Shown: positions 261 through 64,000 of the stretch, piece after piece
Position numbering within the stretch: the first letter of the stretch is position 1
Layout of the letters: every line of letters starts with the position of its first letter
DNA from: Paragordius varius
Lineage: Eukaryota; Animalia; Nematomorpha
NCBI GenBank assembly: GCA_964247055.1
Contig: OZ176054.1
Coordinates: forward strand, 2,914,001-2,978,000
Direction of reading: 5' to 3'
DNA length: 64,000 bases
Notes under the pieces: generated by a model
What the model was told of the DNA's origin: nothing
The model's input: the letters and a program-made list of their open reading frames with translations, nothing else
Databases searched by the model: none
Made by a program: the position numbers and the translations under genes

Positions 261-3200
261 CTATATAGTGAATACATGTAATTTACGCTTTGTTGTAATT
301 AATACAGTATAATCATAATAACAAGCATAATTATCGTATAAAGATGTATCACTGGAGAATATATCGTCGGTGAAATATGTCCCTTTCAAATCTTTAGATT
401 GAATTTCGGAATTGAGAGGAGATTGGCAGTGTGGCAGTATTTCATGAGTTTTTTGGAAGCATACCTCTAAATATTGAATTTGATCATTTACGTTTTTCAA
501 ACTATATGTATATATTAGTGTATGCGCCCCAAGTAATAAAGACCGAGTTTCGGGGTCTCTTAAATTATCCAAATTTTTCTGTAAACATAATTGAGCAAAT
601 GATATGAGATGAATTTCAACCCGTTTTACCGATTCAATACCCAAAATTACGGCATCCCCACACATTGCGATGGCTACTGGCCTAAAATTCGTTTTAAGTT
701 TTAAATAATTAGAATGAAATTCCTTGGTCGCACTAATATGAGACAAAATTTGATTTGAATGATGACATTCTAAGCTTTTGATATGGGTGCTTCCTTCTGA
801 ATTTAAGTTAGTTTTGAAAAAAGTATTTAATATTTTATTTTTCACCATGCGACACATATAAATGTCAAATTCAAAAACTTGTCCATTCAAGGTTGATGAT
901 GAAAACGCAACAACCAACTTTTTATCTTTCAGATACATAACCGTGGAACCTCTTGATACAAAATTTTTGATTCGATGATATATGGGTAGGTGGAAATAAA
1001 AGATAAGATCATCAAATGCTATACCCAAATTGATGGTTTGTTTGCAAATGCGTTGTTTTAAGCACCAAAATTTAGCCTCTCCATCCAAAGAGAATGTCGT
1101 AAGTACATCATTCCAAATCCTTATGTGAAGCATGAGTTTAGAATCGGCTAAAGCAAAGAGTTGTTTTACCTTATGATTTCGAGAGTTGCCTTTAGATGTG
1201 CTGCGTTTGATTGCGGGCACATCGGCTATCGGTTTCGCACACTTTTTTAATGGTTCATGGTGAGAATTTTGTTTTTGAGTAGGCTTATACCATTTCCAAA
1301 CGGTAACCCTGTGATTTGATCCATCTGTCACGATAATATCTTTCCAAACACCCATGGATTTTGGGAAATTATTTGCACCAAAACCATATATTTTTTGACT
1401 GTTTAGGTGTAGAACTGGGTAACATGATTTTGTTTTGTTATAACTAGATGAGGTGGTAAGCGTATGGTAATAAACTGCTTCACGGGAGGATAAACTTAAA
1501 AAATGTGATACATTGTTGTTTTGGATGTTAAATGTGGGGGACATGTCTTCTAACAAACAAATATCTACTATAGCACATTTTCCAAGAACAAATTTAGCTA
1601 AAGGTTTGGGTGGTTTTGTCTTGAATAAGCCTACTTTTTCATATACATTTTGATATGTGTTAGATGAATGGATGAAACATCTAATTTGGTCCGATATATC
1701 CCAAATTAATATGAAACCTATGTTAATAAAATATTAATTTTTTAAAATATCAACGGGTATAAAAGGCGTGATGGTAAAGTAGGTAAGGGTCCTGAACCCT
1801 TACACTGCGTGACGAAACCTGAAACCACGCAATTTTTTCATCATCTCTGTCTGCCCTGGATAGGTGAGTGTAAAGCCTTCACGGGTCCGGATACAATTTA
1901 AGTCCTTACCCTTAAATAAAAAAAAAGGAAAAAAAGACTCTAAACTGTATGTTTTAAGATTATAATATCAAATATTAAAAGCATCCTAGCTTTTACTGAA
2001 AGGAGTATATGTTGGATCCAAGAGAGAGAAAAAATTATTGACCAGTAATATTATAACAGAAAAATATACTAATTGTAATTTAAAAAAAACACAAAATCTT
2101 ATACATTATATTTACCTAAAATTCATTTTTTTATTTTTCATATCAAGTGATAAGCATATGTTCAAAAATTTTTAACTTGTTTGTGACCAGTGCCAGTCAC
2201 TGCCATTAAGCACTATTGGCTGGTCAGACCCGACCTTAGTTTTTATATTATATTTTGTAACTCTAATTCTTAATGAAATTTCTTCTAACAAAAAATAAAT
2301 TAAGTATAATGGTTTACCGAAAAAAATTTGTTACCTGTTGAAAAGGCAGTTAACGCAAAATTGGCCCCATTCGGGAAATTGATAATTTTAAAGGCAGTTA
2401 TTATATCATTATTATCTTTTGAGTTCTCTGAGTCATAATCAAGTAATTTCGATACACATTTACTAAATTTATGGGAATGTGATAAGGGTTTAATAGTGAT
2501 TGCCTTACTTATATTTCCACAATTATTTCTTTTTGCTAAATTATGTGACGTACTATTAAACGAATCATTTGGAATGATGGCGGCGCCTGGCTGAAAGCTG
2601 ATTGGAAAAATTTTATTGCAGGTTCGTAACAAATTTTTCCAGAAATTTTCGGGAAACGTAGGGTGATTGGGTATTCGTTGGTGGTCAGATGAAAGATTAT
2701 TATGGTAAGGTTCAGCATTTAAGTAATTGTTTATTGGAAAACCTAAAAAAAATTAAAAAAAATAAAAAATTAAAATTTACGCTTAATTAGTATTAAATTA
2801 ATAACTGTCAAAAGGTTATTATAAAAATTTCTTATACGACTTCCTGTTGCATGCAATATAATATAATTAAACCGTCCAAAAAATTAAATTTATAATCTCT
2901 GGAGAAGATAGATAGAGAGAGAAAAAGAAAGGATAAAAACTAATTAAATTAAGCCTCGGATCTTATATAGTTTAGTTGTAAACTTTTTCTTTGTCCCTTT
3001 TTAAGTATCAACGACGGCTTCTTCAACACAAATCCTCAAAAGCCTATGAATTCATACATTAAAGGTCAATATTTTTGCTTTAATGTTATCCAATACGTGG
3101 CCATAAAAATTCAATCCAATTCGATAAATAATTATAACGTTTTAGAAATAATTAATTTTATATAAACTAAACAAATTTGAATCCACGTGGGAATTGGTTG

Positions 3201-13400: not shown

Positions 13401-16400
13401 AATATTAATTTTATCACCGACCCCAAATGGGGTCGCGACCCATAGTTTAAGAAGCCCTGATTTATATAGTTAAATAAGTTTTTTTTGAAATATTTTCCTA
13501 GAAATAAATATGCCTATTTAAAGTTATTATAACAATTTCCTTTACACTCCATATGTTTAGCTATTTTGATACACGTCGGGCTCAGTCCCGTTTAAAGGAA
13601 TAAAACGGTCAACCGAATAGGCATCTTTAAACAATATTTTCCAATTTAAATCAATGGCCAAAAAGATGGTGACATATAAAGATCAAGTTGAACAAATATA
13701 TCCAAATTATAAAAAAGTTGCATTAACTTTATAATACCAATTAGAAATGAGTTAAAAGAAACGGTTTTTGTACCATGTCGCATATGGTTTTAAAAATTTC
13801 GCTCTTACATTATATTAACATATTAAAAGCTTAAAAATAAACATTATTATCGTTAACAATATTAATAAACTTGGACATTTTAATTTTTAAAGTAATCGTC
13901 TTCGACATCACAGCGATTCATTAATAAGGTGTGTGTTTATAATTTTTAAAATACTTTTTTGATTTAGTTTTTAATTACACTGCTAGATTTCAACCTACTT
14001 AAAATTTTTTTCATATTTTATATTTTAGAACTATTAAGTTTGAACACAAAAAACCCAAACTTATTCACGTAGAAACAGGAGATATAAGGACAATATGGCC
14101 AATAGAGAAGTATGGATGTTCATACCTCCATCAAATTAATTGCTCTTTTCGTAATTGTTATCTCACTGATTGGAATGATCCATTGATTAATTCTAAATTC
14201 CCTTTCATCCCGGTCAAACGAAATAAAATTCAGTATAATGATCAAGCTGATCTTATCCTTTGGCGTGAAGGTTTAGCCTCACCCTTCATGACTACCTTAA
14301 GGCGAAAAAAACGAAATTTCGATCAGATATGGATGTGGCATTCTTTGGAAAGTTCAGATACATTAGTTCCTCAATTGGAAGAATTTGTTCAAGGTTACAA
14401 TTGGACAGCTACTTACAAAAGTAATTCGGATATTGTTACGCCTTATGCAAAATATGTCTTATCTCATTTACCTGATAATATCGCCCCGCAATTTTATAGA
14501 TTATTAACGAAACGAGAAATAAACAAAGCTATAACAAATTTTCAACAAACATTTGTCCATCCATACTTTGGTACCAACTATTCGAGTTATAATACAAGTT
14601 GGTTATCCCCCTCTTCTTCGATAATCAAATATCTACAAACGAAACAAATGATTTTAACTACATCTAAATTGTCACAACATATTATTGATAAAACTTTTTT
14701 ACTTAAGCGCAAGTTTGCAGCATGGTTCGTTTCCAATTGCAATCTCAATCGACGTTTACATTACGCCAAAGAATTGATAAAATATATTCCCATTGATATA
14801 TATGGCAATTGTGGTCCCTTAGTATGTCCTCGTGTGCTAGATAGCTGCTGCAAAGATATGCTGAAAAGAGATTATAAATTTTATTTGGCTTTCGAGAATA
14901 CTGAAGTACCAGAATACGTAACGGAGAAATTTTTTGAAAACGCGTTAAAGTATAAACTATTAATATTTTTGGTAATTTTTTTAAGATAAAGGAAACGATA
15001 GAATTATATAGCCTAAATCAGGAATGTCCAACACAAATATCTTTGCGGCTGCTTTGATAATTTTGTTTATCGATTTTTCGCTAAATTATGGATGATATAT
15101 CTTTTAAAAATCAAATTTTATATTTTTTGACATTTTTAGAGCATTTTTGCATATCGAAAAAAGCTTATTGGACATCCCTCGCCTAAATAATTGAAAAATA
15201 AAAAAGTTGGTTGTAATGCATTCATTATATTTTAAATATGTTTAACACTTCGATTCAAATTCGGGTATTTAAATACAGACTAAATTTAAGTTAGGATTTA
15301 TAAAAAACTACAGAAGGAAACAGTCCCAATTTAAATTTATGCTTTTAACCTAATAAAAATTATATAAATATGCCAAATTATCTAAATAAAAATTTGTTTT
15401 GAAAAATCCATGTCAAACTACTTCGTCGCCATTTTTATTTTATAAAATTGCTGTAAAATATCGTCTTCATTTTATTTTAACGGTAAAATTAAAGCTAATT
15501 TTTTATTTGAATATCTAACATTGATAGAAATATAAAAAGCGGTTTATTTTGTATTATTTTTAATTTTAGCATTGCACACATGTCACGTTGACCAAATTTT
15601 TACCTTTCGGTTTTAGCTTAAAATAAGTAATATCAAGTATTTTTGAATAATTTTATATATTTCGGTTTATTAATGTTATATAAGTGTAAAATTTTGCCAT
15701 GGTTTCGATTCCTTCCATATTTTTTAAAAAATTTAATTTTAAACAGACCTGGGGGTATCCAACTACCTCAATTTGAATCGTAGGACTGAAATGAATGTGT
15801 TGTATCCAGGTGTTAAATAATTGGACAAAATTTCAATATTTATTATAATTAATTGAATAATAATAGTGGGGCCATTGAAAATGTAGGTATTTTTTTAGTT
15901 ATACATAATGCAGTCATTTTTTAGCCTATAAAATGTAATTATTTTCCATGAAAATGGAAAGCAAACTTAACGGAAAAGATATTAATACACATAAAATTAA
16001 TTCATAACCGTACTTATATAATTCAAAAATAGTATAAATTCAATATTTTTTTATCAATAATACAATTTTTTAAAAGCTTAAAAATGAAATTAGGCAATGA
16101 ACAATTTTATATTAGCAATGAATACAAAGTTATGTTTAACTCATTCATAAATAAAATATTGCATTTAGATACGATTTAGTACCGATAGTTTTAGGAGCCA
16201 GGCCTCAGGATTATAGTAAGATTGCACCTCCATTTTCTTTCATACATGTTGATGAATTTGAAAGTCCGGTCCATTTATCTTTATACTTATACATACTTAT
16301 TGCGAATCCTCATTTATATGCAACTTACCTGGCCTGGAAATATATACCCTCCCTCATTAAATATAAAAATGAACAAGCAGAGCAAACAAGTTATTTATTT

Positions 16401-20400: not shown

Positions 20401-23400
20401 GTATAAAAAAAAGTAATAATATGTGAGTTTGACTTTTAATAAGATATGAGTTGATACAAACTATGATATTTATTTATTTGGGATAAGGTTTACAACCGTG
20501 GTGTTGGTTGGGGCAGTAAAACGCGCTAATGTCAAAGGCCAGTTACTAATTAACTGTAAAATCATTATTTGTGCATAAGGGCATGTGTTACGTAAAAAAT
20601 TGCCTCAGAATAACCATGAAGTATGAATATTATGAATATAAACTACTTCGTGGCAAAAAAACTCCGATCTAGAGGCTTACCCTTGAAGATTACATGTTAA
20701 CGCAAATTTTAAAATATCAATGCGGAATTTTACATATTTTAAATCATTTTAATTTTTTTATATGATCACTTTGCTTATGTGAATGTAGGTAGAGCAATAA
20801 ATATAAATTAAATTATTTATCAATTATACACAAAAAATAAAATTGTATTCTAATAAAAGTTAAGGAGATATTCAATTTTTATGTAATTTCAAATAATTTT
20901 ATATTAGATTTAACCAAGTAATATATGTTCCGTAATTTATAATTTGTTATAAATATATTTATATATTAAACCTGGAGCACGTTTGAACATAAACACTTTT
21001 GTTTTACCCATACCCCCATACAATGTGTGATAAACTATAAAACATAACAAAAAAATAATTAATTGTATAATGGAAAAAAAAATAAAATTTATTAAAAAAA
21101 TGACAAAAATACTTGTTCGTTGGTCATAACGCTCAATGTAAACCAAATTTTTAAAGGCTCGATTTTTAGCGATCCGCAATGCTGATCTAGCTTCCTGAGA
21201 ATTTGCTTCTGCCCAACCTTTTAATATAAATGTCGTAAAATATAGATAGTCAATCTTATAAAAAAAATTATACTTAAAAGTTTGGAAATTTTAATCTTTT
21301 GGTTTTATAAAGTACAAGATATCATTTCTTGTTTATATTGTCTAAGGGCTGATTTATATGGGCAAGTAATGTTTAAAGTTAGAGGTCCTTTAACACATTA
21401 TTAAACAAAGCAATAAAATTATATAGCCTATGTTGAATAAATTAAGGACAAAAATATGGTTAACTTTTAAAAAACTGACCGCCATTATAAATACTCAAAG
21501 ATAATTGTTCAAAAAAACTTAAATAAAAAATTAATATTGTAATTTCATAAATTGTTTTAAATACTATAAAGTTTGTTATTAACAAAATTTAAACCGATTT
21601 TGGGAGATTTGTTCTTGATTTATATAATTAAAACATAATACATTTGCATTAATAATATATTAGTTAACTAGTTAAGACGACCGCCTAAACTGCATTTATA
21701 AATTATAAACGGTCGATTCGCTTTTAAATATTTTAACGGTTAAATAAATACATCAGTAATCTCAACATTAAAAATCTATAAAACAAACCACATACCTATT
21801 AGACCATGATGATTCCCAGTTATGACTATACAGTTAAAATAACGTTTTCGACCCATGTTTCCTGTCATACGACAATTTATACGCAGCCTTATGATGCGTG
21901 AATCAAAATTCAAACCCCAAAAAAGTTCTCGAATATTGCGCGGTTTATTTTCAAACGTTGCCAAATATTTCTCTTTTTCACGTTCAGGCATATTTTCTAA
22001 CGAAAGGCTTTGTAAAGAAGATTGTTGTTCATTTGTGAGAAAGTTATCTGTAGATGTCATCTTTTTTATATCACCAGAGGTGGTTTGTGGTTGCTGTTTT
22101 TTATTTGTCGATTCAAGTGCCATTTGTTCACGCTTTAGATGAACGAAATATGTCATGTAATTAGGTATAAAAATCTGTCTTTTTTTTACTAAAAACGGCG
22201 ACATTTTTTGGATTAAAACGGATTAATATTTTATATTTGAATAAAAAGTAGTGTTATTTTTTAATGAAAAAATATTTGCAAATTGGATTAGATGTGTTTA
22301 AGAATGAGGAAATGTTGAATTTAAAAGAAAAAGTATTATTAATAGATAGAGCAATAAATAACAGGGATTAGACCCGGAACCGCTTTTAGTATAGCATATT
22401 TTGGTCTCTCTGAACCTAATTTAAAACTGGTTCCATGGTTTTTTGGTTTAAGAGTTTACGAATAAACTTTATTGTGTTTTTTTAAAAAAGTTTAGAAAAA
22501 TACACTATTTATATAATATGACAAAATTATATTAAAATATGAAAAATTAAATCAACTTTATTAATACTGTTAATAATTCCGATTCCAGTTCACAAAAACA
22601 CTGTTTCTATTGCCCCAATTAAAATTGTTAAAAATTAAAAGATTCCCTTTTCTTAATCAATATACGGTTATATTGACAAAAAAACAATGCCAAAAATATA
22701 ATATTTCATTTTTATTAAAACCTAAACATTTTATGCTATTTAAAGTCAAATATTTAATATACTCCAAGACAATACTTTCTAATAATGCCAATTAATTATG
22801 ATTTAACATAGATAGATTAATTAAATAAAAAGTAGTTTATATACAAAAAAAGATTAAACAAACACGTTTAGTTGATACCAAATAAGTTTGTTGTTTTGCC
22901 AAATATTTGATGGCACCTTCGGGTAAACCCAGCTTTCGGCCACCCATATGACCGCCGGACCAACCCCTTTCCTCCGGAGCCGGTTTTATTGCCTTGAATC
23001 GAAACATTTTGTCCCTTGATATGGCGATATAAAATTATTAAATTAATATTTGTATTACAAAATAATGTAGAGTGTAGCTTCCCCCTATAAAACAAACGTA
23101 GCCCATAGTAAGTTTGTTGATAAAAAAAGTGCCTTTAACTACTAGCTTATTTCAACTTAAAGTAAGGTCTAGTGTTAAGTTAGGATTGTTTAAAGTGAGC
23201 CACAAAAATAAAAAATTGAAATATATTAGCATGATACTAATATTAAGCATCATCATTGGAAAAATTGAAAATAATAGTATAATTTTTTTAAGGGTCATAC
23301 AGGGGTTGGCTAACCATTTATTTTCCCAACAATCGGGATTGTCTATTTACATTGTGTGTCAAATATAGAAGTCCGTATAGAAAGATATGATAGATTTTCT

Positions 23401-54316: not shown

Positions 54317-56750
54317 TTGGATTTCACCCTATTCTTGACATCCAATGTGCATTTTAAAAAAATTTTTTATAGCTACACTATAAAAAAATCAAATTAGTAT
54401 TCTGATAAAGATTGTTTTTGGCAAATTAATGATCCTGTGAATATAGGGATTATGCTTCTCTCAGATTCGCACTATGTTAAAATGGTTTAATTTTAAGTGA
54501 GTTTTTGATTATGAATTTCACCTTGAAAAGGGTGTTAAATTTTGTTGTTTCAATACTGGCTCCTCCCTATCTATAAATTTTATTATCCTTAATTTAAAAT
54601 TACTTATAAATAGGTGTGCTCAAAACTTTTTAAAACTTATTTTACAATTTATTTTGTCCTTAAATTTAAGTAAAATTTCAAGAGTTTTCTTATACTTGAT
54701 ATATATCGTTACCCTCCCTCCTTGAATTCTTCAATATTGATTGCAATTCAGTTTACAAATATCTCAGGTATACTACCTTTAAGGGCAACACACACACCAT
54801 TAAAGTCAAGTGCATATTTAATATAAAATTATTAATTAATTTTTGTGAATTTAAATTATTACTTAATTTTTGTGAATTTAATACATATATATATAAATAT
54901 ATATTAATATTTTTTCAAGTGTCAAGTTAACATTTACACACTTATTGTTAAGGACACGCGCCTAAATATAAAGTATTTTTTTAATTTAAGTTTATTTCCA
55001 TATTAATATTTTAATTTACAACTTACCTGCCTGGAAGTCCTATACACTTCTTTACAAAAAAGTATAAAAGGAGTTATGAGATACTTTAAAATATTATATT
55101 CGCATTTTGTCCATAAATTTTAGTTTATTTTCATTATTCCTAAAAGTATAAAAACTTTTTTTCAACAAAATATGGATAATATTTTTTAATATTCCAATAT
55201 TCACGACGAGTCTGATACAAAAAGTATAAATAATTTACCATTAAATTTTCAAATCCCCAAATTTTATAAGCTAATTTTAAATTGGTTATCTACTATAAAA
55301 ATTTTGTAGATATCTTTTATCATTTTTTTATTTCATTTATACATATTTCTTTTGTAAGAAATGGATATATTTTACGTAATCCATACTTAATTAGATATTC
55401 ATTAAAATACATATATAGTTATAAGAACAAGACAAAAAATTTTAACAAAAAAATTTAATTCCCTCTAAACTAAATAATAAATAAATATATTATTATGGTT
55501 TAATTAATTTTACATGCAAACAAACAGGTAAGCTTGTAAGTATTTTTGAAGATCTCATAAATATCAAAATTAACAATAGAAGAGCTTCTCTTTATGTCAT
55601 TCAACATATTTTTAATTACAACAAAAAATTAATTATTATTAAATAAGGAATTTTATTTTGCGTTATACGGGCGTTTTAATTGGTGAATTGATTAAAAATA
55701 ATGCATTTTGCTTAGTAAAATAATCTAATAACTTTTATTTATTATATTCTGAATTTTGCCAATTAAAATTTTCTTTACTTTTTCTTTTTTATATCAGGAT
55801 ATTACGAACACGCATGTATATTATTTAATGAAAGGATTATTTTTATGGAGAATTTTGTTTATAAATTATCAAAAATGTACGGATTTTTTTTACACCGACC
55901 ATATAATATATTATAAAATAAAATTAATTCATATTACAATATGTAGCGTTTTTATTGACCTTAACACCTTTAAATAAGACTTATATTTATAATTTTCCTA
56001 TATATATATATATATATATATATATGGTGCCCTTGACCTTTCTAAACTCTATTAATATACATATATCTATATATATAAATGGTTACTAAAAATAAGGATA
56101 TTTTTGTGACAAAAATTTTCTATAAAGATGTATTGTGTCTTTTTCTTAAACAGATTAACTCAACTCCCCAACCTATATGTCATATAAACTAATTTACGGG
56201 GTCAACACTGATTTTTTACTGGTAGTATGAGTTTCTTAAATAAATATTTTTTTGATTTCTTGCCATGTAACAATTATTTACAAATTAATATATAGTTACA
56301 AGCAATAATAATAGGTTTTGAGGTCATTTTATGATGAATATACCCTACTTATGTAACGGAGATGAAAAACAACTTTTTGTTGCAAATTTTTTCGTATTTT
56401 ATCTTAGCATTACATGGGTCTCTAAGCTGAAATTCGACCGGCTAATTTGCTACGATTGCACCATTTAAACAAATATTATATCAGGATGTAATTATATATA
56501 TATATATATTTATAATGCTCTTTTACATTCTACTAATGTTATCAATTGATTACGGGGTTTTTAAAAATATAAGCTATTTCGGTTGACTTATAAAACCGGG
56601 TAATTTTGGCCCAAAATTGATTATTTAGTATTGTTGGATGGAGGCATTTGAAATCATACCAAAACCGGATAAACTCATTTTGTAGTGTCGATTGATCTTG
56701 ATTTTATTATTGTTGACATAGGTTTGGGTAGCTTACTTTTGTCTGTATGG

Positions 56751-57264
56751 GTAAGTTGTGTACATAGTAATGTAAATTTTTGATTCGATCTATATTTAAA
56801 ATAGTAAGTAATTTGCCAAACGAAATTTGGTAAAAAAAATATTTTGAAAAAAAAAATTATATATTTTGTCTCATACATCATGTTTATTTGATCACAGTCA
56901 GGTTCAAAATAACCTTTTAATATTTTTTTAGTTATTGTTTGCTACTATTTTTTTTTCATTTGTTTAACAAGTTTTTTTTTGGTAGATGATATCAATTTGC
57001 ATCACAAAATCCTTATTACCCTGTAATTATTGAAGAAAGCCATCCGCCTTTCGAGATGAGATTTATTCATTTACAAAATTATTTTACAACATTAGAAATG
57101 ATTGTGATAAACCAAATATTTCAATTAACTGATTTTGATACGAGACATTGCTCAACTATGGTACTACGTTTTCTTTAATATTTATTTGAAAATAAAAAAA
57201 TACCAAAAAATATGACAATTTTTAATAATTAATATCTGACTGTCACCCATCATTCATTCCTCAG
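56751..57264 (+). other. Putative 5'-UTR intron of the insulin-like gene
   Basis: Strong donor GG|GTAAGT at 56751 and acceptor TTCATTCCTCAG| at 57264, 22 nt before the ATG; a 5'-UTR intron is the classical insulin gene arrangement. Pairing of these two sites is inferred. Confidence 0.45.
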
Positions 57265-57286
57265 CAAAAAAATTTACGGGAAAAAC

Positions 57287-58698
57287 ATGATTAAAAGTTT
57301 GAGGCCAAACACATTTTTTGCCCATTTATGTACAACATCAATTTTTATTTTCTTAACATTCCACATGGCTAATAAAATATTAATCACTTCTATACATTGC
57401 CACAACACGGTTTCCGAAAATATTGGTGATAATGATAAATATATCTTTGAAAAATATTTAAGGCATCACCATAAACTGTATGAAAAAACAAAAACTACTG
57501 ATCGTAAAAACAACAAAGGCAGGTATATTTCCTCAAACCTTGAATGGTTTAATCAAAATACACCGAGCCTGAAAACGTCAGATAAAAAACTAGTTAGCGA
57601 AGGAAAAATATTTAATTTTCCAGTTATTTCAAGAGGTTTACGTAAACGGAGAAGTCCACAAAACCGTCGTAATTTACTCCGACAACGGCCTTTAAATGAT
57701 TTTTTATATTATGATGATGTAGGTTATTCAAATGAAGAACCGTACTCATTATCATATTATCAAGCATTTGATAGTATACGAACACACCCTAAACTATTTT
57801 CTAAACTCATTTCACCCAATGCCAAGTTTAATCCTCCGTCAGCACCATTCATATCTAGTCTGAAAAATTCTGAAGAACATTCACTAATGACCAAAGACAA
57901 TGAAAATAATTATAAGAATAAAAGAAGCCACATCACACCAAATGGTAACAAAGGTAGCGAAAAACCGCCCAATACAAAATTGAATGATTTGCCTGTAGCT
58001 TTAGGGGAAGATCAAAAAAGCATTCTAAATCAATACATGACTATAATGGGAACGCGAAAAAAGTATTGTGGTAACGTACTTATCGATATGTTACAAAAAT
58101 TGTGTGCAAGCAATTACAATGATAAGATTCAAAATACGGCCGCTAGAATCCAGCATAACCGATACAAACGGAGTTTCCGAAGTAAAATAAATATTTTGTT
58201 TTTTTATATGTTTTTAGTTATAAACCATAAAAATAAATTCTGCTATTTTGTCGTTTCACTTTTTCGTTTTAAGCTTTTCAACTTACCGTTACTAATCATG
58301 CTTACTTTATAGATTACATCGTAAGTCCGGACAATGGGGAAGACGATATAGTTATAGCTGATATAAATGCGGATGATAATTCCAATACAAATGTTAATAA
58401 TGGAAATGAAATCATTATTGAAGATTTTGACGAAGATGCCATACACACTCAAAATGGATATAGCAGTAGTCTAGATCTAAATGGGACAGGATCAAATTCT
58501 GCTTTAGCCAATAACATAGTTACTGAATGTTGTCAAAAAGAATGTACCATATTTCAACTCACGGCTTATTGCAAGGCTACTGCCATGCCTGATACAAATA
58601 TTGTTTTAAATAATCAAAAGAACCGTAGTGGAGGAAATGGACAAAATTTAGGAAATTTTTTATTCACCCTTAAAAAGTTGATTAATAATTCGGCATAA
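57287..58698 (+). CDS. Insulin/IGF-family peptide precursor with very long N-terminal pro-region, 2 coding exons, 426 aa
   Basis: Exons 57287-58181 and 58313-58698 (phase-1 GT-AG intron in the C-domain). B-chain YCGNVLIDMLQKLC (C261-x11-C273); A-chain NIVTECCQKECTIFQLTAYC (C371,C372-x3-C376-x8-C385); N-terminal hydrophobic segment; RYKR site at 292-295. Confidence 0.9.
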
Positions 58699-61559
58699 AT
58701 GTTTTTTTTGAAAAAGAGAAAAGTTTCACACATTCTCAAAAGAGAACTTATGAATAGATTAAAATATTCGCTAATTTCTACTTATTCAATATACTGAAGA
58801 TCTCTAAATATATTATTTTCTTTTAAATAACAATACATTCCGTAACCAGGTACATAAAAACTTTTTATCCAACATGAATAGAAAAAGTATTATTTTTTAT
58901 TCGTCTATGTGGCAAAATACAGGGAACCAATGAATTCTCAAACTGATTTTGTAAATATTTTATGATTCATATATTCACCCTTTTTATTTTATAAAATGTT
59001 AATGAATGTATACAATTATAGACATTTATTTATTTACTCAATTTTATTTTAGAAAATCCGATTTATTAATATATTTTCCTTAATTAGCACAAATTTATAC
59101 ACCATTTCAATGTCTTACATCTTCAATAATTAATTAGGCCCACATGCGAAATCTTAATTTATTTGTACCTCTGTTTAATAAATAACGTGATCATTTATTT
59201 ATTAATGCTATATTTAATTGCAAGTCGTCTGCGTTTTATTGCGATAATTATTGATATACTACCCAATTATTTATGGCACAGGATTGATCTATGAATGCAT
59301 AAAATTTGCGAATTTTTGATTTCGGCTATAAAATTACATAATATGAGTAATATCACAGGTATTGGTTGGGCTTTGCCGGCTAGAAAATAAAAACCGATAG
59401 GATTGCATATATATGCAGTCATACTTTGTCATTTTAAGCAGTTGTATTACAAATTATAAAATTTTGATACTCATAGATTTTGTTTTAATAGTATATATTT
59501 GAAAATATTACAGTTAATGCAAATCAAAAAAATCGAAACTTCACCAGTTATATTTGATTTCTAAAGCATGTGAAAATCACAAATTATAGAAATTACACCA
59601 TATTTAATTTTTAAAGCATGTGAAAAACACGTGTGTTTTTACTAGTTTTTCGATCAAAAGCCGTGAATGCATTCATTACTGGTAAACAATCTTAATTAAA
59701 CTTATTGAGGGTTTTAAGGTTAGATGATTGAGAAATTTATTAAATAAGTTCCATTGTTTGAAATTCTTAAATTTTTATCATTATTTTTAAATTTTTACAT
59801 AATTTTATGCAATCAATGCTTTTGCAATCTTAACTTTAAATAATTATATCCCTATATAAAAACAATTAAATTTTCATATATCACAAAATCGATGTTAACG
59901 CAAATATTGTAACTAGTTTTAGAAAAATATTAATTTTGCTAACTAATTGTTTTCAAAATTATATTATTAGATAGTGAAGTTCATAGACATGTTATTGGAA
60001 ACGATAAAATGTCAATAATAGTTTAAAAAACCAATTTTAACAACCGTTAAAGATATTTTGTTAAATAGCTTTTTTAAGGTTACAAAACTGCTAAAAATAC
60101 TATTTAAAATTTAGTTACATGATAAGTCAAATTCTAAATTTAAACTTGAAATAGTAATGATGTTTCTCCCATAAATAATTTCGGAAAGAATATAGCGTAA
60201 AAATAATTGTAACCCCGTCACGCGTGGTAAACTGTGTTAAAATAATTTATTTATATAAATACGATTTTACAATACTTAAAATGTCTCCATGCGAATAAGC
60301 CGATTCAATATCATATATATATATATATATATTATATAATGAAAAAAATATTTTGCTTTTACTCCTTGTATAATGAGGCATTGATAATTTTTAAGTCAAA
60401 CTCAAAATTATCCCATTCTTTACTAAAAACACTTGAGCTATTCTCTTTATATATAATGCCGGCTGAGAAGATTCATATTTACATAGCTCTTAATAAAAAT
60501 ATATTTATGCGATTTCATTACATATTTATAACCAGCAGTATTGACTAAAATCCACGGACCATTCGGCCTGAACATATTTTAAAAACAATTTTTATAAGTA
60601 TCCATATTATACCCTTTATCTTGAGAACATTTTTTGTAATTTGATTGGCAGTTTTCTCATTTCCACCACTATGAGAGTTTGCTACCCACAAAATAATCCA
60701 AAAAAACGGTTAATCATAATAAAAAACTAAATAAAATATTACTTATATTAATTATAAAAATTAACATCTGCGCAAACAAAATAACTTTTGAATTAAATGG
60801 CCTTAAGATTCTCAAAAAAATGCCGTAAAACTTATCTGCCTGTTCGCACCTCTGAGCAGGGCTAGATTAACGAGAAAAGGAGCTAATTAATGTTAGTCAT
60901 TGACAAATTTATAATCGGCCTCTTGGATTGTTCCCAGAAAAAATTCTCTGTGTTATCATCAAATATTGCAACTACTTAACACAATAATCAGCGCCTCTGT
61001 TTTTACCATAGTTTATCTGCCAGCGTATTATTTGAGAAGGGTCAAATTATCTTCGTATTAAAACTTTTGTCATATATAGCGGCATGTTCCTAAACTTAAC
61101 TGCATCTTTAGCCAATTTCACTAATACTACTGAAAATAACCTAAATCGAAAATTTTAAAGTAAAAGATTTAAAAATAAATAAGCGAATCTAAATTATGGT
61201 AAAAGGTGTTAAGATGATAACAGTTTCTTGCAAATTCATAATAAATCTACATATTATTTGGTGTCCAAGTTTTACTATACTATCCTATTGTGTTCATATA
61301 CATATTAAATATGTGAAAGGTATTTACTTATTGATTTAATGTTAGCACCAATTAATTGTATCAAGGTCAAATTGTTTACATTTTATCTTATGTACCCAAA
61401 CGATATATCCCCACTTTGTCGCCTAATATACCATATTAGATTTACAATTATAGAGGATGATATCAATATTGTAAAATTGGTCAAACAATTTACGTCATCA
61501 ATAAAGCTACCTTATTGTCTTTAGTTTTTGCCACAATTGATATTTAACTCAGAAATCAG

Positions 61560-63258: not shown

Positions 63259-63583
63259 CTATGCGTTTGGATAAGCTGTTTTATCGAGATCATCGAAATA
63301 GGGGTGATTTATGGCACTTTTTGCAGTTATCCGTGAAACGGGATTATATAATAGAGTTTTCTAAATAAAAATTATACATCAACATATTAATTCTAAAAAA
63401 ATATAATTAATTCCTTTTAGTAGTTAATTAATAGTTTTTACTGCTAATAAATCTTTTCCAGAATCTTCGATTGGTTTTAACAATTCATTCAAACTGTTTG
63501 ATTTCCAATTTGGAAAAGTCATTTTATAATCCGGAAGATTGGTTACTCCCTTCCATGTACTTTCCGTCGGCGTAGATAATATT
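63259..63583 (-). CDS. CDK1: CDK1-like cyclin-dependent kinase, last two exons (5' part lies beyond the window)
   Basis: Exons 63583-63442 and 63360-63259 (81-nt intron): [80 protein letters not shown]. The kinase C-lobe is closer to CDK1 than CDK2; not in the ORF track. Confidence 0.8.
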
Positions 63584-64000
63584 CTACAAAAAAACAATAT
63601 TTAGTACCGGCTGATATCAGAACACATATGATTCTTGTGTATTCCAAAAGAATTAGTTTTTTCAACGGCTTTAAAACCATAAAATAATAAATACTATTTT
63701 ATTTATTAATAATGTTTTTTCTAACTAAATTTTTTAGGACAGAGAAAATTAGTACGAAACAATATAATTCTGTATTTTGGCTATTAGGGTGTCTCTAAAT
63801 ATATAAACCAAAACCATTTGTACCGGAATCCTTTTTTGTAAAAAAACATGGAACCGAAAAAACGGTTTTAATTTTAATCTCTGGTTTTCTCTTAATTTAT
63901 TGTTAAAATATTTGAGTTTTATCAAGCTTTTATGCGGCTTCAGTAAAATATTTGACATCTTTAAACTAGTTAAAATTTGATATAATCTTACAATACTTCA

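What the first reader, a model, noticed from the sequence alone, without database searches (positions are those of the whole stretch)
57287..58698. Giant insulin-family precursor: about 220-aa multi-site pro-region before the B chain and an atypical processing map
Seen: 426-aa product with canonical six-cysteine spacing and the classical phase-1 C-domain intron, but the first B-chain Cys is residue 261. Between the signal-like segment and the B chain lie RKRR (119-122), RR (127-128), KNKR (210-213) and RKK (257-259), bounding potential peptides, including an acidic Tyr-rich stretch (DFLYYDDVGYSNEEPY) resembling sulfation sites. After the B chain there is RYKR (292-295), then about 70 acidic/Asn-rich residues with no basic site before the A chain, then a 41-aa tail. 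Established: insulin-family precursors are usually about 90-200 aa with the B chain directly or shortly after the signal peptide; IGFs keep the C domain and have D/E tails. Inference: a polyprotein releasing extra peptides together with an IGF-like hormone bearing a long acidic A-chain extension, or a latent pro-hormone. If the organism is a parasite, it is a candidate host-modulating secreted factor (speculative).
Basis: partly seen in the sequence, partly recalled or inferred. Interest (0 to 1): 0.85.

Follow-up and report, generated by a model that had tools for sequence, protein, structure and literature searches.

The report
Oversized insulin-like precursor, horsehair worm
This is a real-looking, intact two-exon insulin/IGF-like hormone gene, apparently from a horsehair worm, with about 230 extra coding residues before the B chain; that layout is unusual, but no RNA or related sequence could be found to confirm it or to give the extra part a function.

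Summary
Exon 1 (57287-58181) and exon 2 (58313-58698) are joined over a 131-nt GT-AG phase-1 intron. Together they encode 426 residues with the six insulin cysteines at 261, 273, 371, 372, 376 and 385.

Exon 2 passes Pfam's Insulin threshold. The A- and B-chain regions separately give only weak matches (E 0.07-0.6) to IGF-I/insulin/DILP chains.

The long pre-B region reads as coding:
- It has 0 stops in frame, against 9-36 in the other five frames.
- Its GC is 32%, against 22-24% around it.
- It scores +0.24 bit/codon on a codon model, about 8 SD above intergenic DNA.
- Its listed allelic differences are 5 non-synonymous, 4 synonymous and one clean codon deletion.

It has no detectable relative in any of the three protein or contig collections searched, and no confident fold.

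The only sequencing runs that hold the locus are DNA, so the exon structure is not shown by RNA.

Earlier notes of this scan say the genome is a horsehair worm. The window's GC fits a published nematomorph genome.

Best reading: an IGF-like pro-hormone with an enlarged, weakly constrained pro-peptide, analogous to the nematode "F peptide", and three furin-type sites. Extra bioactive peptides and action on the host remain speculation.

The scan had noted only this same stretch before.

The parts
57250..57264 (+). Acceptor-like site (pyrimidine run + CAG) 22 nt upstream of the start codon; possible 5'UTR intron or trans-splice acceptor
   Evidence: Read directly; not tested further
57287..58181 (+). 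Exon 1: 298 codons + 1 nt (signal-like segment, pro-region, B chain, start of C domain)
   Evidence: The ORF begins at the first ATG after an in-frame TAA. Donor GT at 58182.
57287..57370 (+). Signal-peptide-like N-terminus (residues 1-28: basic n-region with K3 and R6, hydrophobic F10-A28); could instead be a signal anchor
   Evidence: Hydropathy (most hydrophobic 15-mers at residues 9-33). SignalP was not available.
57371..58054 (+). Pro-region, residues 29-256: orphan, basic (net +14), rich in N, K and S, with no N-glycosylation sequon
   Evidence: 0 in-frame stops against 9-36 in other frames. Codon model +0.24 bit/codon against -0.36 +/- 0.07 for intergenic DNA, and codon-position composition chi-square p = 5e-4. 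No homologs. pLDDT < 50.
57641..57652 (+). RKRR 119-122, furin-type site followed by Ser
57914..57925 (+). KNKR 210-213, convertase-type site followed by Ser; Arg213 carries only a synonymous allelic change
58055..58063 (+). RKK 257-259, directly before Tyr260-Cys261
58064..58159 (+). B-chain region, residues 260-291 (YCGNVLIDMLQKLC...)
   Evidence: Motif scan. phmmer match to the DILP5 B chain, E 0.6.
58160..58171 (+). RYKR 292-295, furin-type site followed by Ser
58182..58312 (+). Phase-1 intron in the C domain, 131 nt, GT..AG, 22% GC, with stops in frame
58313..58698 (+). Exon 2: acidic C-domain remainder, A chain, 41-aa tail, stop TAA 58696-58698
58516..58572 (+). A-chain region, residues 367-385 (IVTECCQKECTIFQLTAYC)
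   Evidence: Pfam PF00049, 25.7 bits against a gathering score of 23. phmmer matches to IGF-I, insulin and DILP1/2/5 A chains.
58758..58763 (+). ATTAAA, candidate polyadenylation signal 60 nt after the stop (AATAAA also at 59177)
   Evidence: consensus match only

Best explanation
A single-copy, intact insulin/IGF-like hormone gene of a very AT-rich animal, most likely a horsehair worm (Nematomorpha). Exon 1 encodes, in order: an N-terminal signal-like segment; a roughly 230-residue lineage-specific pro-region that is weakly constrained and probably disordered; and the B chain. Exon 2 encodes an acidic C domain free of Lys and Arg, the A chain and a 41-residue tail. Inferred mechanism: the precursor enters the secretory pathway and the insulin core folds with the three canonical disulfides. 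Furin/kexin-type convertases then cut after RKRR122, KNKR213 and RYKR295, each followed by Ser, and perhaps after RKK259. This removes the pro-region, much as nematode beta-class ILPs lose their 'F peptide'. It leaves a two-chain IGF-like ligand: the B chain disulfide-linked to C-domain + A chain + tail. That ligand would act on an insulin-receptor-type tyrosine kinase. Much of the size of the pro-region and C domain is best explained by growth of low-constraint linker sequence in an AT-biased genome, not by extra hormones. Shown here: the gene anatomy, insulin-family membership and the coding character of the pro-region. Inferred: secretion, the cleavages, the receptor and the organism.
For: Insulin membership: PF00049 above its gathering score on exon 2. 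The A and B regions match IGF-I/insulin/DILP A chains and the DILP5 B chain separately, though weakly. Cysteine spacing is canonical and the C-domain intron is phase 1. Coding pro-region: p ~ 1e-10 for the open frame. It has 0 stops against 9-36 in the other frames. GC is 32% against 22-24% in the intron and flanks, with GC at codon positions 1/2/3 of .36/.35/.25, like exon 2. A codon model trained on other exons of the window gives +0.24 bit/codon in frame 0, against -0.30 and -0.52 in the other frames and -0.36 +/- 0.07 for intergenic DNA. Frame 0 is the best frame in every 40-codon window. The ORF starts with a basic n-region and a hydrophobic core; starting at Met251 or Met254 would leave no signal. 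Constraint: for the listed allelic SNPs, the whole gene shows 5N:7S (pN/pS 0.18, p = 0.004) and the pro-region 5N:4S (pN/pS 0.32, p = 0.09). The only listed indel in the ORF removes exactly codon 97, while flanking indels are of 1, 2, 4 and 12 nt. Single copy: depth is even and no second placement was found; there are no repeats. Precedent for a cleaved pre-B pro-peptide: the F-B-A layout of C. elegans ILPs, processed by KPC-1 and EGL-3 (PMC3978837; 10.1101/336750). Organism: several earlier follow-up notes. Window GC is 26.5%, against 26.93% GC and 64% repeats in Gordionus montsenyensis.
Against: There is no RNA evidence. All runs holding the locus cover the intron and intergenic DNA alike, so they are DNA. 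No ortholog could be found, so conservation of the pro-region is untested. The SNP list is only the best-supported subset of what the reads tool found, and the pro-region alone is not significant. The hydrophobic stretch is long (F10-A28, continuing to I36) and His sits at -3 of the most obvious cleavage site, so a signal anchor is possible. RKK lies directly before Tyr260-Cys261, which would leave an unusually short B-chain N-terminus. Micro-introns of 21-26 nt are reported at the 5' ends of genes in this genome. Four in-frame GT..AG 21-mers exist in exon 1, all with weak consensus.
Confidence: 0.6

Rival explanations
1. Polyprotein. The pro-region is cut at RKRR, RR, KNKR and RKK into additional bioactive peptides, for example a sulfated acidic Tyr-rich peptide, which are co-released with the IGF-like hormone.
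For: Three convertase sites of the R/K-x-K/R-R type, each followed by Ser, and an acidic Tyr-rich stretch at residues 139-160. The listed changes at codons 213 and 214, at the KNKR site, are synonymous. In C. elegans the INS-4 F peptide acts in trans (10.1101/336750).
Against: There are no repeated peptide units and no Gly-basic amidation signals. No homolog of any segment was found. Non-synonymous changes and a codon deletion are tolerated. No structure was predicted. The composition, rich in N, K and S, is what AT-biased drift gives.
Confidence: 0.15
2. Mis-joined model. Part or all of 57400-58050 is intronic or alternatively spliced, so that the main product is a conventional short precursor with a signal peptide followed shortly by the B chain.
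For: No RNA data. One reasonable donor, CAG|GTATAT at 57523, and pyrimidine-rich acceptors at 57858 and 58004. The genome is reported to use unusual introns.
Against: The frame is open and coding-like along the whole stretch. The only in-frame donor-acceptor pair of fair strength removes residues 79-190 only, and none joins the signal segment to the B chain. The real intron has 22% GC and stops in frame, unlike this region (32% GC).
Confidence: 0.12
3. Membrane-anchored pro-hormone. The N-terminal hydrophobic stretch is an uncleaved signal anchor (type II), and furin cleavage at RKRR122 sheds the ectodomain that carries the insulin domain.
For: The hydrophobic run of 19-27 residues is longer than a typical signal h-region. 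His is at -3 of the best cleavage candidate. A furin site lies about 90 residues further on. AlphaFold draws one helix over residues 7-45, at low confidence.
Against: The author knows of no precedent in the insulin family. Small residues at 35 and 38 offer alternative signal-peptidase sites. No predictor was available.
Confidence: 0.08
4. Host-directed effector. The parasitic juvenile secretes the insulin-like ligand into the insect host's haemocoel, where it acts on the host's insulin receptor.
For: The organism is probably an insect parasite. The best solved-structure match of the B chain is insect DILP5. From general knowledge, cone-snail venom insulins and viral insulin-like peptides show that insulins can be used on other species.
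Against: The matches are weak (E 0.07-0.6), and for the A chain the top hits are vertebrate IGF-I. The gene has the host genome's own composition and the ancestral intron, so nothing suggests capture from a host. There are no expression data. Any animal needs its own ILP, and this is the only one noted so far in this genome.
Confidence: 0.05

Closest known systems
Insulin/IGF/relaxin superfamily (Pfam PF00049), especially IGF-type single-gene precursors (B-C-A-D-E)
   Same: Six cysteines in canonical spacing. B-chain motif CGxxLxxxLxxxC and A-chain motif IVxECCxxxCxxxxLxxYC. A phase-1 intron in the C domain. No dibasic site at the C/A junction, and a C-terminal tail after the last Cys, as in IGFs.
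   Different: About 230 residues lie between the signal-like segment and the B chain. The C domain is about 97 residues (12 in IGF-I, from general knowledge) and carries an internal furin site. The tail has no similarity to D or E domains.
Nematode beta-class ILPs with an F peptide (F-B-A; INS-2 to INS-9, DAF-28)
   Same: A pro-peptide between the signal peptide and the B chain, removed at an RR/KR or RxxR site by EGL-3 or KPC-1 (PMC3978837). Nematoda is the sister phylum of Nematomorpha.
   Different: In C. elegans beta-class ILPs the B and A peptides are contiguous with no C peptide (PMC3978837), and the class has a fourth disulfide (10.1101/336750). Here there is a long C domain and only three disulfides. 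Pfam Ins_beta scores only E 0.057, against 2e-5 for Insulin. The pro-region is far longer than the short nematode F peptides (the author's recollection of their size).
Arthropod IGF (aIGF) with long extensions (Veenstra 2020, PMC7357564)
   Same: An insulin-family precursor made much longer by non-core sequence rich in basic sites. Such extensions are easily missed or mis-modelled in genomes.
   Different: In aIGF the extension is C-terminal, encoded by two extra exons, and conserved (GTVxPx[F/Y]). Here the extension is N-terminal, lies within exon 1, and has no detectable relatives.
Planarian Smed-ILP-1 (Collins et al. 2010, PMC2953531)
   Same: An invertebrate worm ILP with an N-terminal stretch before the B-chain Cys, detected by peptidomics.
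   Different: Smed-ILP-1 is about 140 aa, with only about 23 residues before the first Cys. It is a different sequence.

Membership tests
Insulin/IGF/relaxin superfamily (PF00049) | Profile match above the curated threshold | tested here: met
Exon 2 alone scores 25.7 bits against the gathering score of 23, E 2.3e-5. Exon 1 alone gives no Pfam hit, because the B chain is too short.
Insulin/IGF/relaxin superfamily (PF00049) | Six cysteines: B chain Cx11C (inclusive CGx10C), A chain CCx3Cx8C | tested here: met
   Cys261 and 273; Cys371, 372, 376 and 385
Insulin/IGF/relaxin superfamily (PF00049) | B chain precedes A chain in one precursor, with a phase-1 intron in the connecting domain | tested here: met
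   Exon 1 is 298 codons + 1 nt. GT..AG intron at 58182-58312. The splice itself is inferred, not seen in RNA.
Insulin/IGF/relaxin superfamily (PF00049) | Secreted: N-terminal signal peptide | tested here: inconclusive
   A basic n-region and a hydrophobic core are present, but the core is long and the -3/-1 pattern is ambiguous. No SignalP was available.
Insulin/IGF/relaxin superfamily (PF00049) | Insulin fold (three helices, three disulfides) | not tested
   Exon 1 alone folds with mean pLDDT 39.
Classical two-chain insulin (excised C peptide) | Dibasic sites at both the B/C and C/A junctions | tested here: not met
   RYKR at 292-295 only. There is no Lys or Arg between residues 299 and 374.
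Nematode beta-type ILP (PF03488, F-B-A) | Profile match; contiguous B-A without a C peptide; extra disulfide | tested here: not met
   Ins_beta scores 13.9 bits against a cut-off of 21. The C domain is about 97 residues, and there are only six Cys in the core.
Nematode beta-type ILP (PF03488, F-B-A) | Pro-peptide before the B chain ending in a convertase site | tested here: met
   RKK at 257-259, with KNKR at 210-213 and RKRR at 119-122 upstream. Cleavage itself was not tested.
Arthropod IGF (aIGF) | Conserved C-terminal extension on extra exons (GTVxPx[F/Y]) | tested here: not met
   The tail of 41 aa ends at a stop within exon 2, lacks the motif, and has no strong donor in it.

The most novel reading that the evidence does not exclude
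The precursor is a parasite-made multi-product pro-hormone. The horsehair worm secretes it during its stage inside the insect. Convertases release an IGF-like ligand that engages the host's insulin receptor, together with pro-region peptides with activities of their own. This would help the worm redirect host growth, metabolism or behaviour.
Probability: 0.05. Interest if true: 0.85.

Novelty: new variant of a known kind. Interest (0 to 1): 0.4.

Why it matters
No insulin-like peptide of Nematomorpha turned up in the literature searched, and none of the paper searches found an insulin-family precursor with about 230 residues ahead of the B chain. If RNA confirms the model, it would be the first ILP described for this phylum. 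It would also link the nematode 'F peptide' layout with the classical B-C-A layout in the sister phylum. It shows as well how AT-biased genomes can inflate the non-core parts of a hormone precursor. Because horsehair worms grow inside insects and alter their behaviour, a secreted ILP is a concrete and easily testable candidate for host interaction, though nothing here shows that. Practically, the gene is likely to be missed or truncated by gene finders and is worth adding to nematomorph annotations.

Tried and rejected
- **Homolog searches.** All came back empty: exon 1 and exon 2 against the 5.8-billion word-indexed collection; exon 1 against 1.84 billion representatives with full HMMER; the ESM Atlas feature search of residues 28-255; JGI metagenome contigs with both exons; and an exact-product look-up of the 341-aa ORF. 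Conservation of the pro-region therefore could not be tested.
- **RNA evidence.** Five 'RNA?' runs of the same species label held none of the words.
- **Planarian origin or identity with Smed-ilp-1.** Rejected. Smed-ILP-1 is a different 140-aa protein, and fucosyltransferase hits show no close flatworm relative.
- **Literature search for the peptide strings.** No paper holds them.
- **Structure of exon 1.** Mean pLDDT was 39, which is useless for fold search, so no fold search was run.
- **Internal repeats or a transposon origin of the pro-region.** None found.
- **Micro-introns inside exon 1.** There are only weak GT..AG 21-mers. One would destroy the B chain, and none is needed by the frame.
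- **Paralogous ILP genes.** None in the window.
- **Chance ORF or pseudogene.** Rejected on the statistics.

Full report
**What is there**

The window is very AT-rich (26.5% GC). On the + strand an ORF opens at the first ATG after an in-frame TAA (57287) and runs 298 codons to a GT at 58182. A 131-nt segment follows, with 22% GC and stops in frame, ending in TTTATAG at 58312. The frame then continues, with the split codon AAT, to a TAA at 58696-58698.

The 426-residue product has Cys261 and Cys273 in a B-chain motif (YCGNVLIDMLQKLC). It has Cys371, 372, 376 and 385 in an A-chain motif (IVTECCQKECTIFQLTAYC). No Lys or Arg occurs between residues 299 and 374, and 41 residues follow the last Cys.

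**Is it an insulin gene?**

Exon 2 alone passes Pfam's curated threshold for PF00049 (25.7 against 23 bits). Against all PDB chains, the A-chain region finds IGF-I, insulin and Drosophila DILP1/2/5 A chains. The B-chain region separately finds the DILP5 B chain. Each match is weak, as expected for 20-30-residue peptides, but both point to the same family. The nematode-specific Ins_beta model scores below its cut-off. With the cysteine spacing and the phase-1 intron in the connecting domain, membership in the insulin/IGF/relaxin superfamily is secure. It is the only such motif in the window.

**Is the 230-residue stretch before the B chain really coding?**

This is the crux, and no RNA could be obtained. 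They are therefore genomic DNA. The RNA-labelled runs of the same species held nothing. The intrinsic evidence is nonetheless strong:

- With a per-codon stop probability of 0.086, about 258 open codons have p ~ 1e-10. In the pro-region the reading frame has 0 stops, while the other five frames have 15, 36, 21, 9 and 16.
- GC is 32%, against 22% in the intron and 23-24% in the flanks. GC by codon position is .36/.35/.25, the same pattern as exon 2.
- A codon model trained on three other coding exons of the window gives +0.24 bit/codon in frame 0. The other frames give -0.30 and -0.52. Three hundred intergenic samples give -0.36 +/- 0.07 (maximum -0.19). Frame 0 wins in every 40-codon window along the exon. 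Codon-position composition differs with p = 5e-4, against 0.93 for the background.
- The ORF starts with a basic n-region (K3, R6) and a hydrophobic core (F10-A28). Initiation at Met251 or Met254 would give an insulin with no signal.
- The DNA runs carry a second haplotype. Of the listed differences, the pro-region has 5 non-synonymous and 4 synonymous changes, and exon 2 has 0 and 3. For the whole gene pN/pS is 0.18 (p = 0.004). For the pro-region alone it is 0.32 (p = 0.09). The one listed indel in the ORF removes exactly codon 97, while indels in the flanks are of 1, 2, 4 and 12 nt. The tool lists only the best-supported differences, so these counts are a sample.
- No in-frame donor-acceptor pair of fair strength would join the signal segment to the B chain. 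The best pair removes residues 79-190 only.

I therefore take the long precursor as the most likely product, at about 0.75-0.8. It is under purifying selection as a whole, with relaxed constraint on the pro-region.

**What is the pro-region?**

Nothing known. It has no Pfam family. It has no relative in the 5.8-billion word-indexed collection, in 1.84 billion representatives read in full by HMMER, in the ESM Atlas feature search or in JGI metagenomes. AlphaFold without an alignment gives mean pLDDT 39, with nothing above 70. There are no internal repeats, no Gly-basic amidation signals and no N-glycosylation sequon. Read depth is that of single-copy DNA.

It is basic (net +14), whereas the exon-2 part of the C domain is equally acidic (-14). 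That invites a charge-masking or latency idea, but this is inference only. Its composition (N 11%, K 10.5%, S 10%), and that of the C domain (N 17%, D 14.5%), is what AT-biased genomes tend to produce in unconstrained linkers.

**Organism**

I could not establish it directly. The fucosyltransferase ORF at 14183-14989 has no relative above about 35% identity over its length. Its best hits are scattered over mites, insects, annelids, molluscs and brachiopods, which suggests a protostome lineage poorly represented in databases. Several earlier follow-up reports of this scan on the same genome conclude that it is a horsehair worm with 21-26-nt micro-introns at the 5' ends of genes. The window's 26.5% GC and its repeat content agree with the published Gordionus montsenyensis genome: 26.93% GC and 63.8% repeats (10.1101/2023.06.26.546503). 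I use 'horsehair worm' as the probable source, only partly tested here.

Because of the micro-intron reports, I scanned exon 1 for GT..AG segments of 20-32 nt. There are four in-frame 21-mers with weak consensus. One lies inside the B chain, and none is required.

**How it most likely works**

The following is inferred. The precursor enters the ER and the insulin core folds with the A6-A11, A7-B7 and A20-B19 equivalents. Furin/kexin-type convertases then cut after RKRR122, KNKR213 and RYKR295. All three are of the R/K-x-K/R-R type and all are followed by Ser. RKK259 may be a further site. The product would be a two-chain IGF-like ligand: the B chain disulfide-linked to a 131-residue chain made of the acidic C-domain remainder, the A chain and the tail. 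There is no basic site at the C/A junction.

The nearest functional precedent for a cleaved pre-B pro-peptide is the F peptide of C. elegans beta-class ILPs (F-B-A). It is removed by EGL-3 at RR/KR sites or by KPC-1 at RxxR sites (PMC3978837) and is reported to be needed in trans for INS-4 activity (10.1101/336750). Nematoda is the sister phylum, so the worm's pro-region may be an enlarged counterpart. The gene is not a beta-type ILP, however: it has three disulfides, a long C domain, and Ins_beta scores below threshold.

The long extensions of arthropod IGF are C-terminal, lie on extra exons and are conserved (PMC7357564), so they are a different thing. Planarian Smed-ILP-1 is short and unrelated in sequence.

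**Rivals**

- The polyprotein reading (extra bioactive peptides, Tyr sulfation) is possible but has no positive support.
- A model with part of the region spliced out cannot be excluded without RNA, but it goes against all the coding statistics.
- The N-terminal hydrophobic run is long enough to be a signal anchor, which would make this a shed type II pro-hormone.
- A host-directed role is attractive because the animal is a parasite of insects. It rests only on weak similarity of the B chain to an insect ILP.

**Novelty and score**

None of the paper searches found a nematomorph ILP or an insulin precursor with such a pre-B region. I rate it a new variant of a known kind. The core is an ordinary insulin-family gene, and the unusual part is orphan sequence of unknown and possibly little function. 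It lacks transcript support. Interest is 0.4.

I did not build, search or fold the joined 426-residue protein.

Noticed in passing
window 57250-57264: A strong splice-acceptor-like site (TCACCCATCATTCATTCCTCAG|C) lies 22 nt upstream of the ILP start codon. It suggests a 5'UTR intron or a trans-splice acceptor.
   Followed up: no
window 14183-14989 (+): A single 268-aa ORF encodes an alpha-1,3-fucosyltransferase (PF00852 + PF17039). Its best database relatives are only about 35% identical over its length and are spread over mites, insects, annelids and molluscs, which shows how isolated this genome is.
   Followed up: partly
window 63424-63597 (-): An exon encodes a cyclin-dependent-kinase-type C-lobe segment ([22 protein letters not shown]). 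It belongs to the neighbouring gene that another note (s1-285238) flags for 22-28-nt introns.
   Followed up: no
window 21776-22204 (-): The end of this ORF matches the Ribosomal_S5 N-terminal domain at 23.4 bits, below the gathering score of 27.1. It is probably an exon of a mitochondrial ribosomal protein S5 gene.
   Followed up: no
window 55500-60500: The DNA runs show two haplotypes at roughly equal depth in one sample, and a third sample fixed for the alternative haplotype. A second species label also holds the reference haplotype at low depth. So heterozygosity is high, or species labels are mixed. A 2026 preprint (10.64898/2026.02.03.703548) reports mislabelled species in horsehair-worm (Chordodes) data.
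   Followed up: partly
window 261-1556 (-): This 431-aa ORF is the longest in the window. It has no Pfam match and a TTG as its first listed start. It could be a transposon-derived or orphan gene.
   Followed up: no
window 57371-58054 and 58315-58512: The charges mirror each other: the pro-region has net +14 and the exon-2 part of the C domain has net -14.
   Followed up: no
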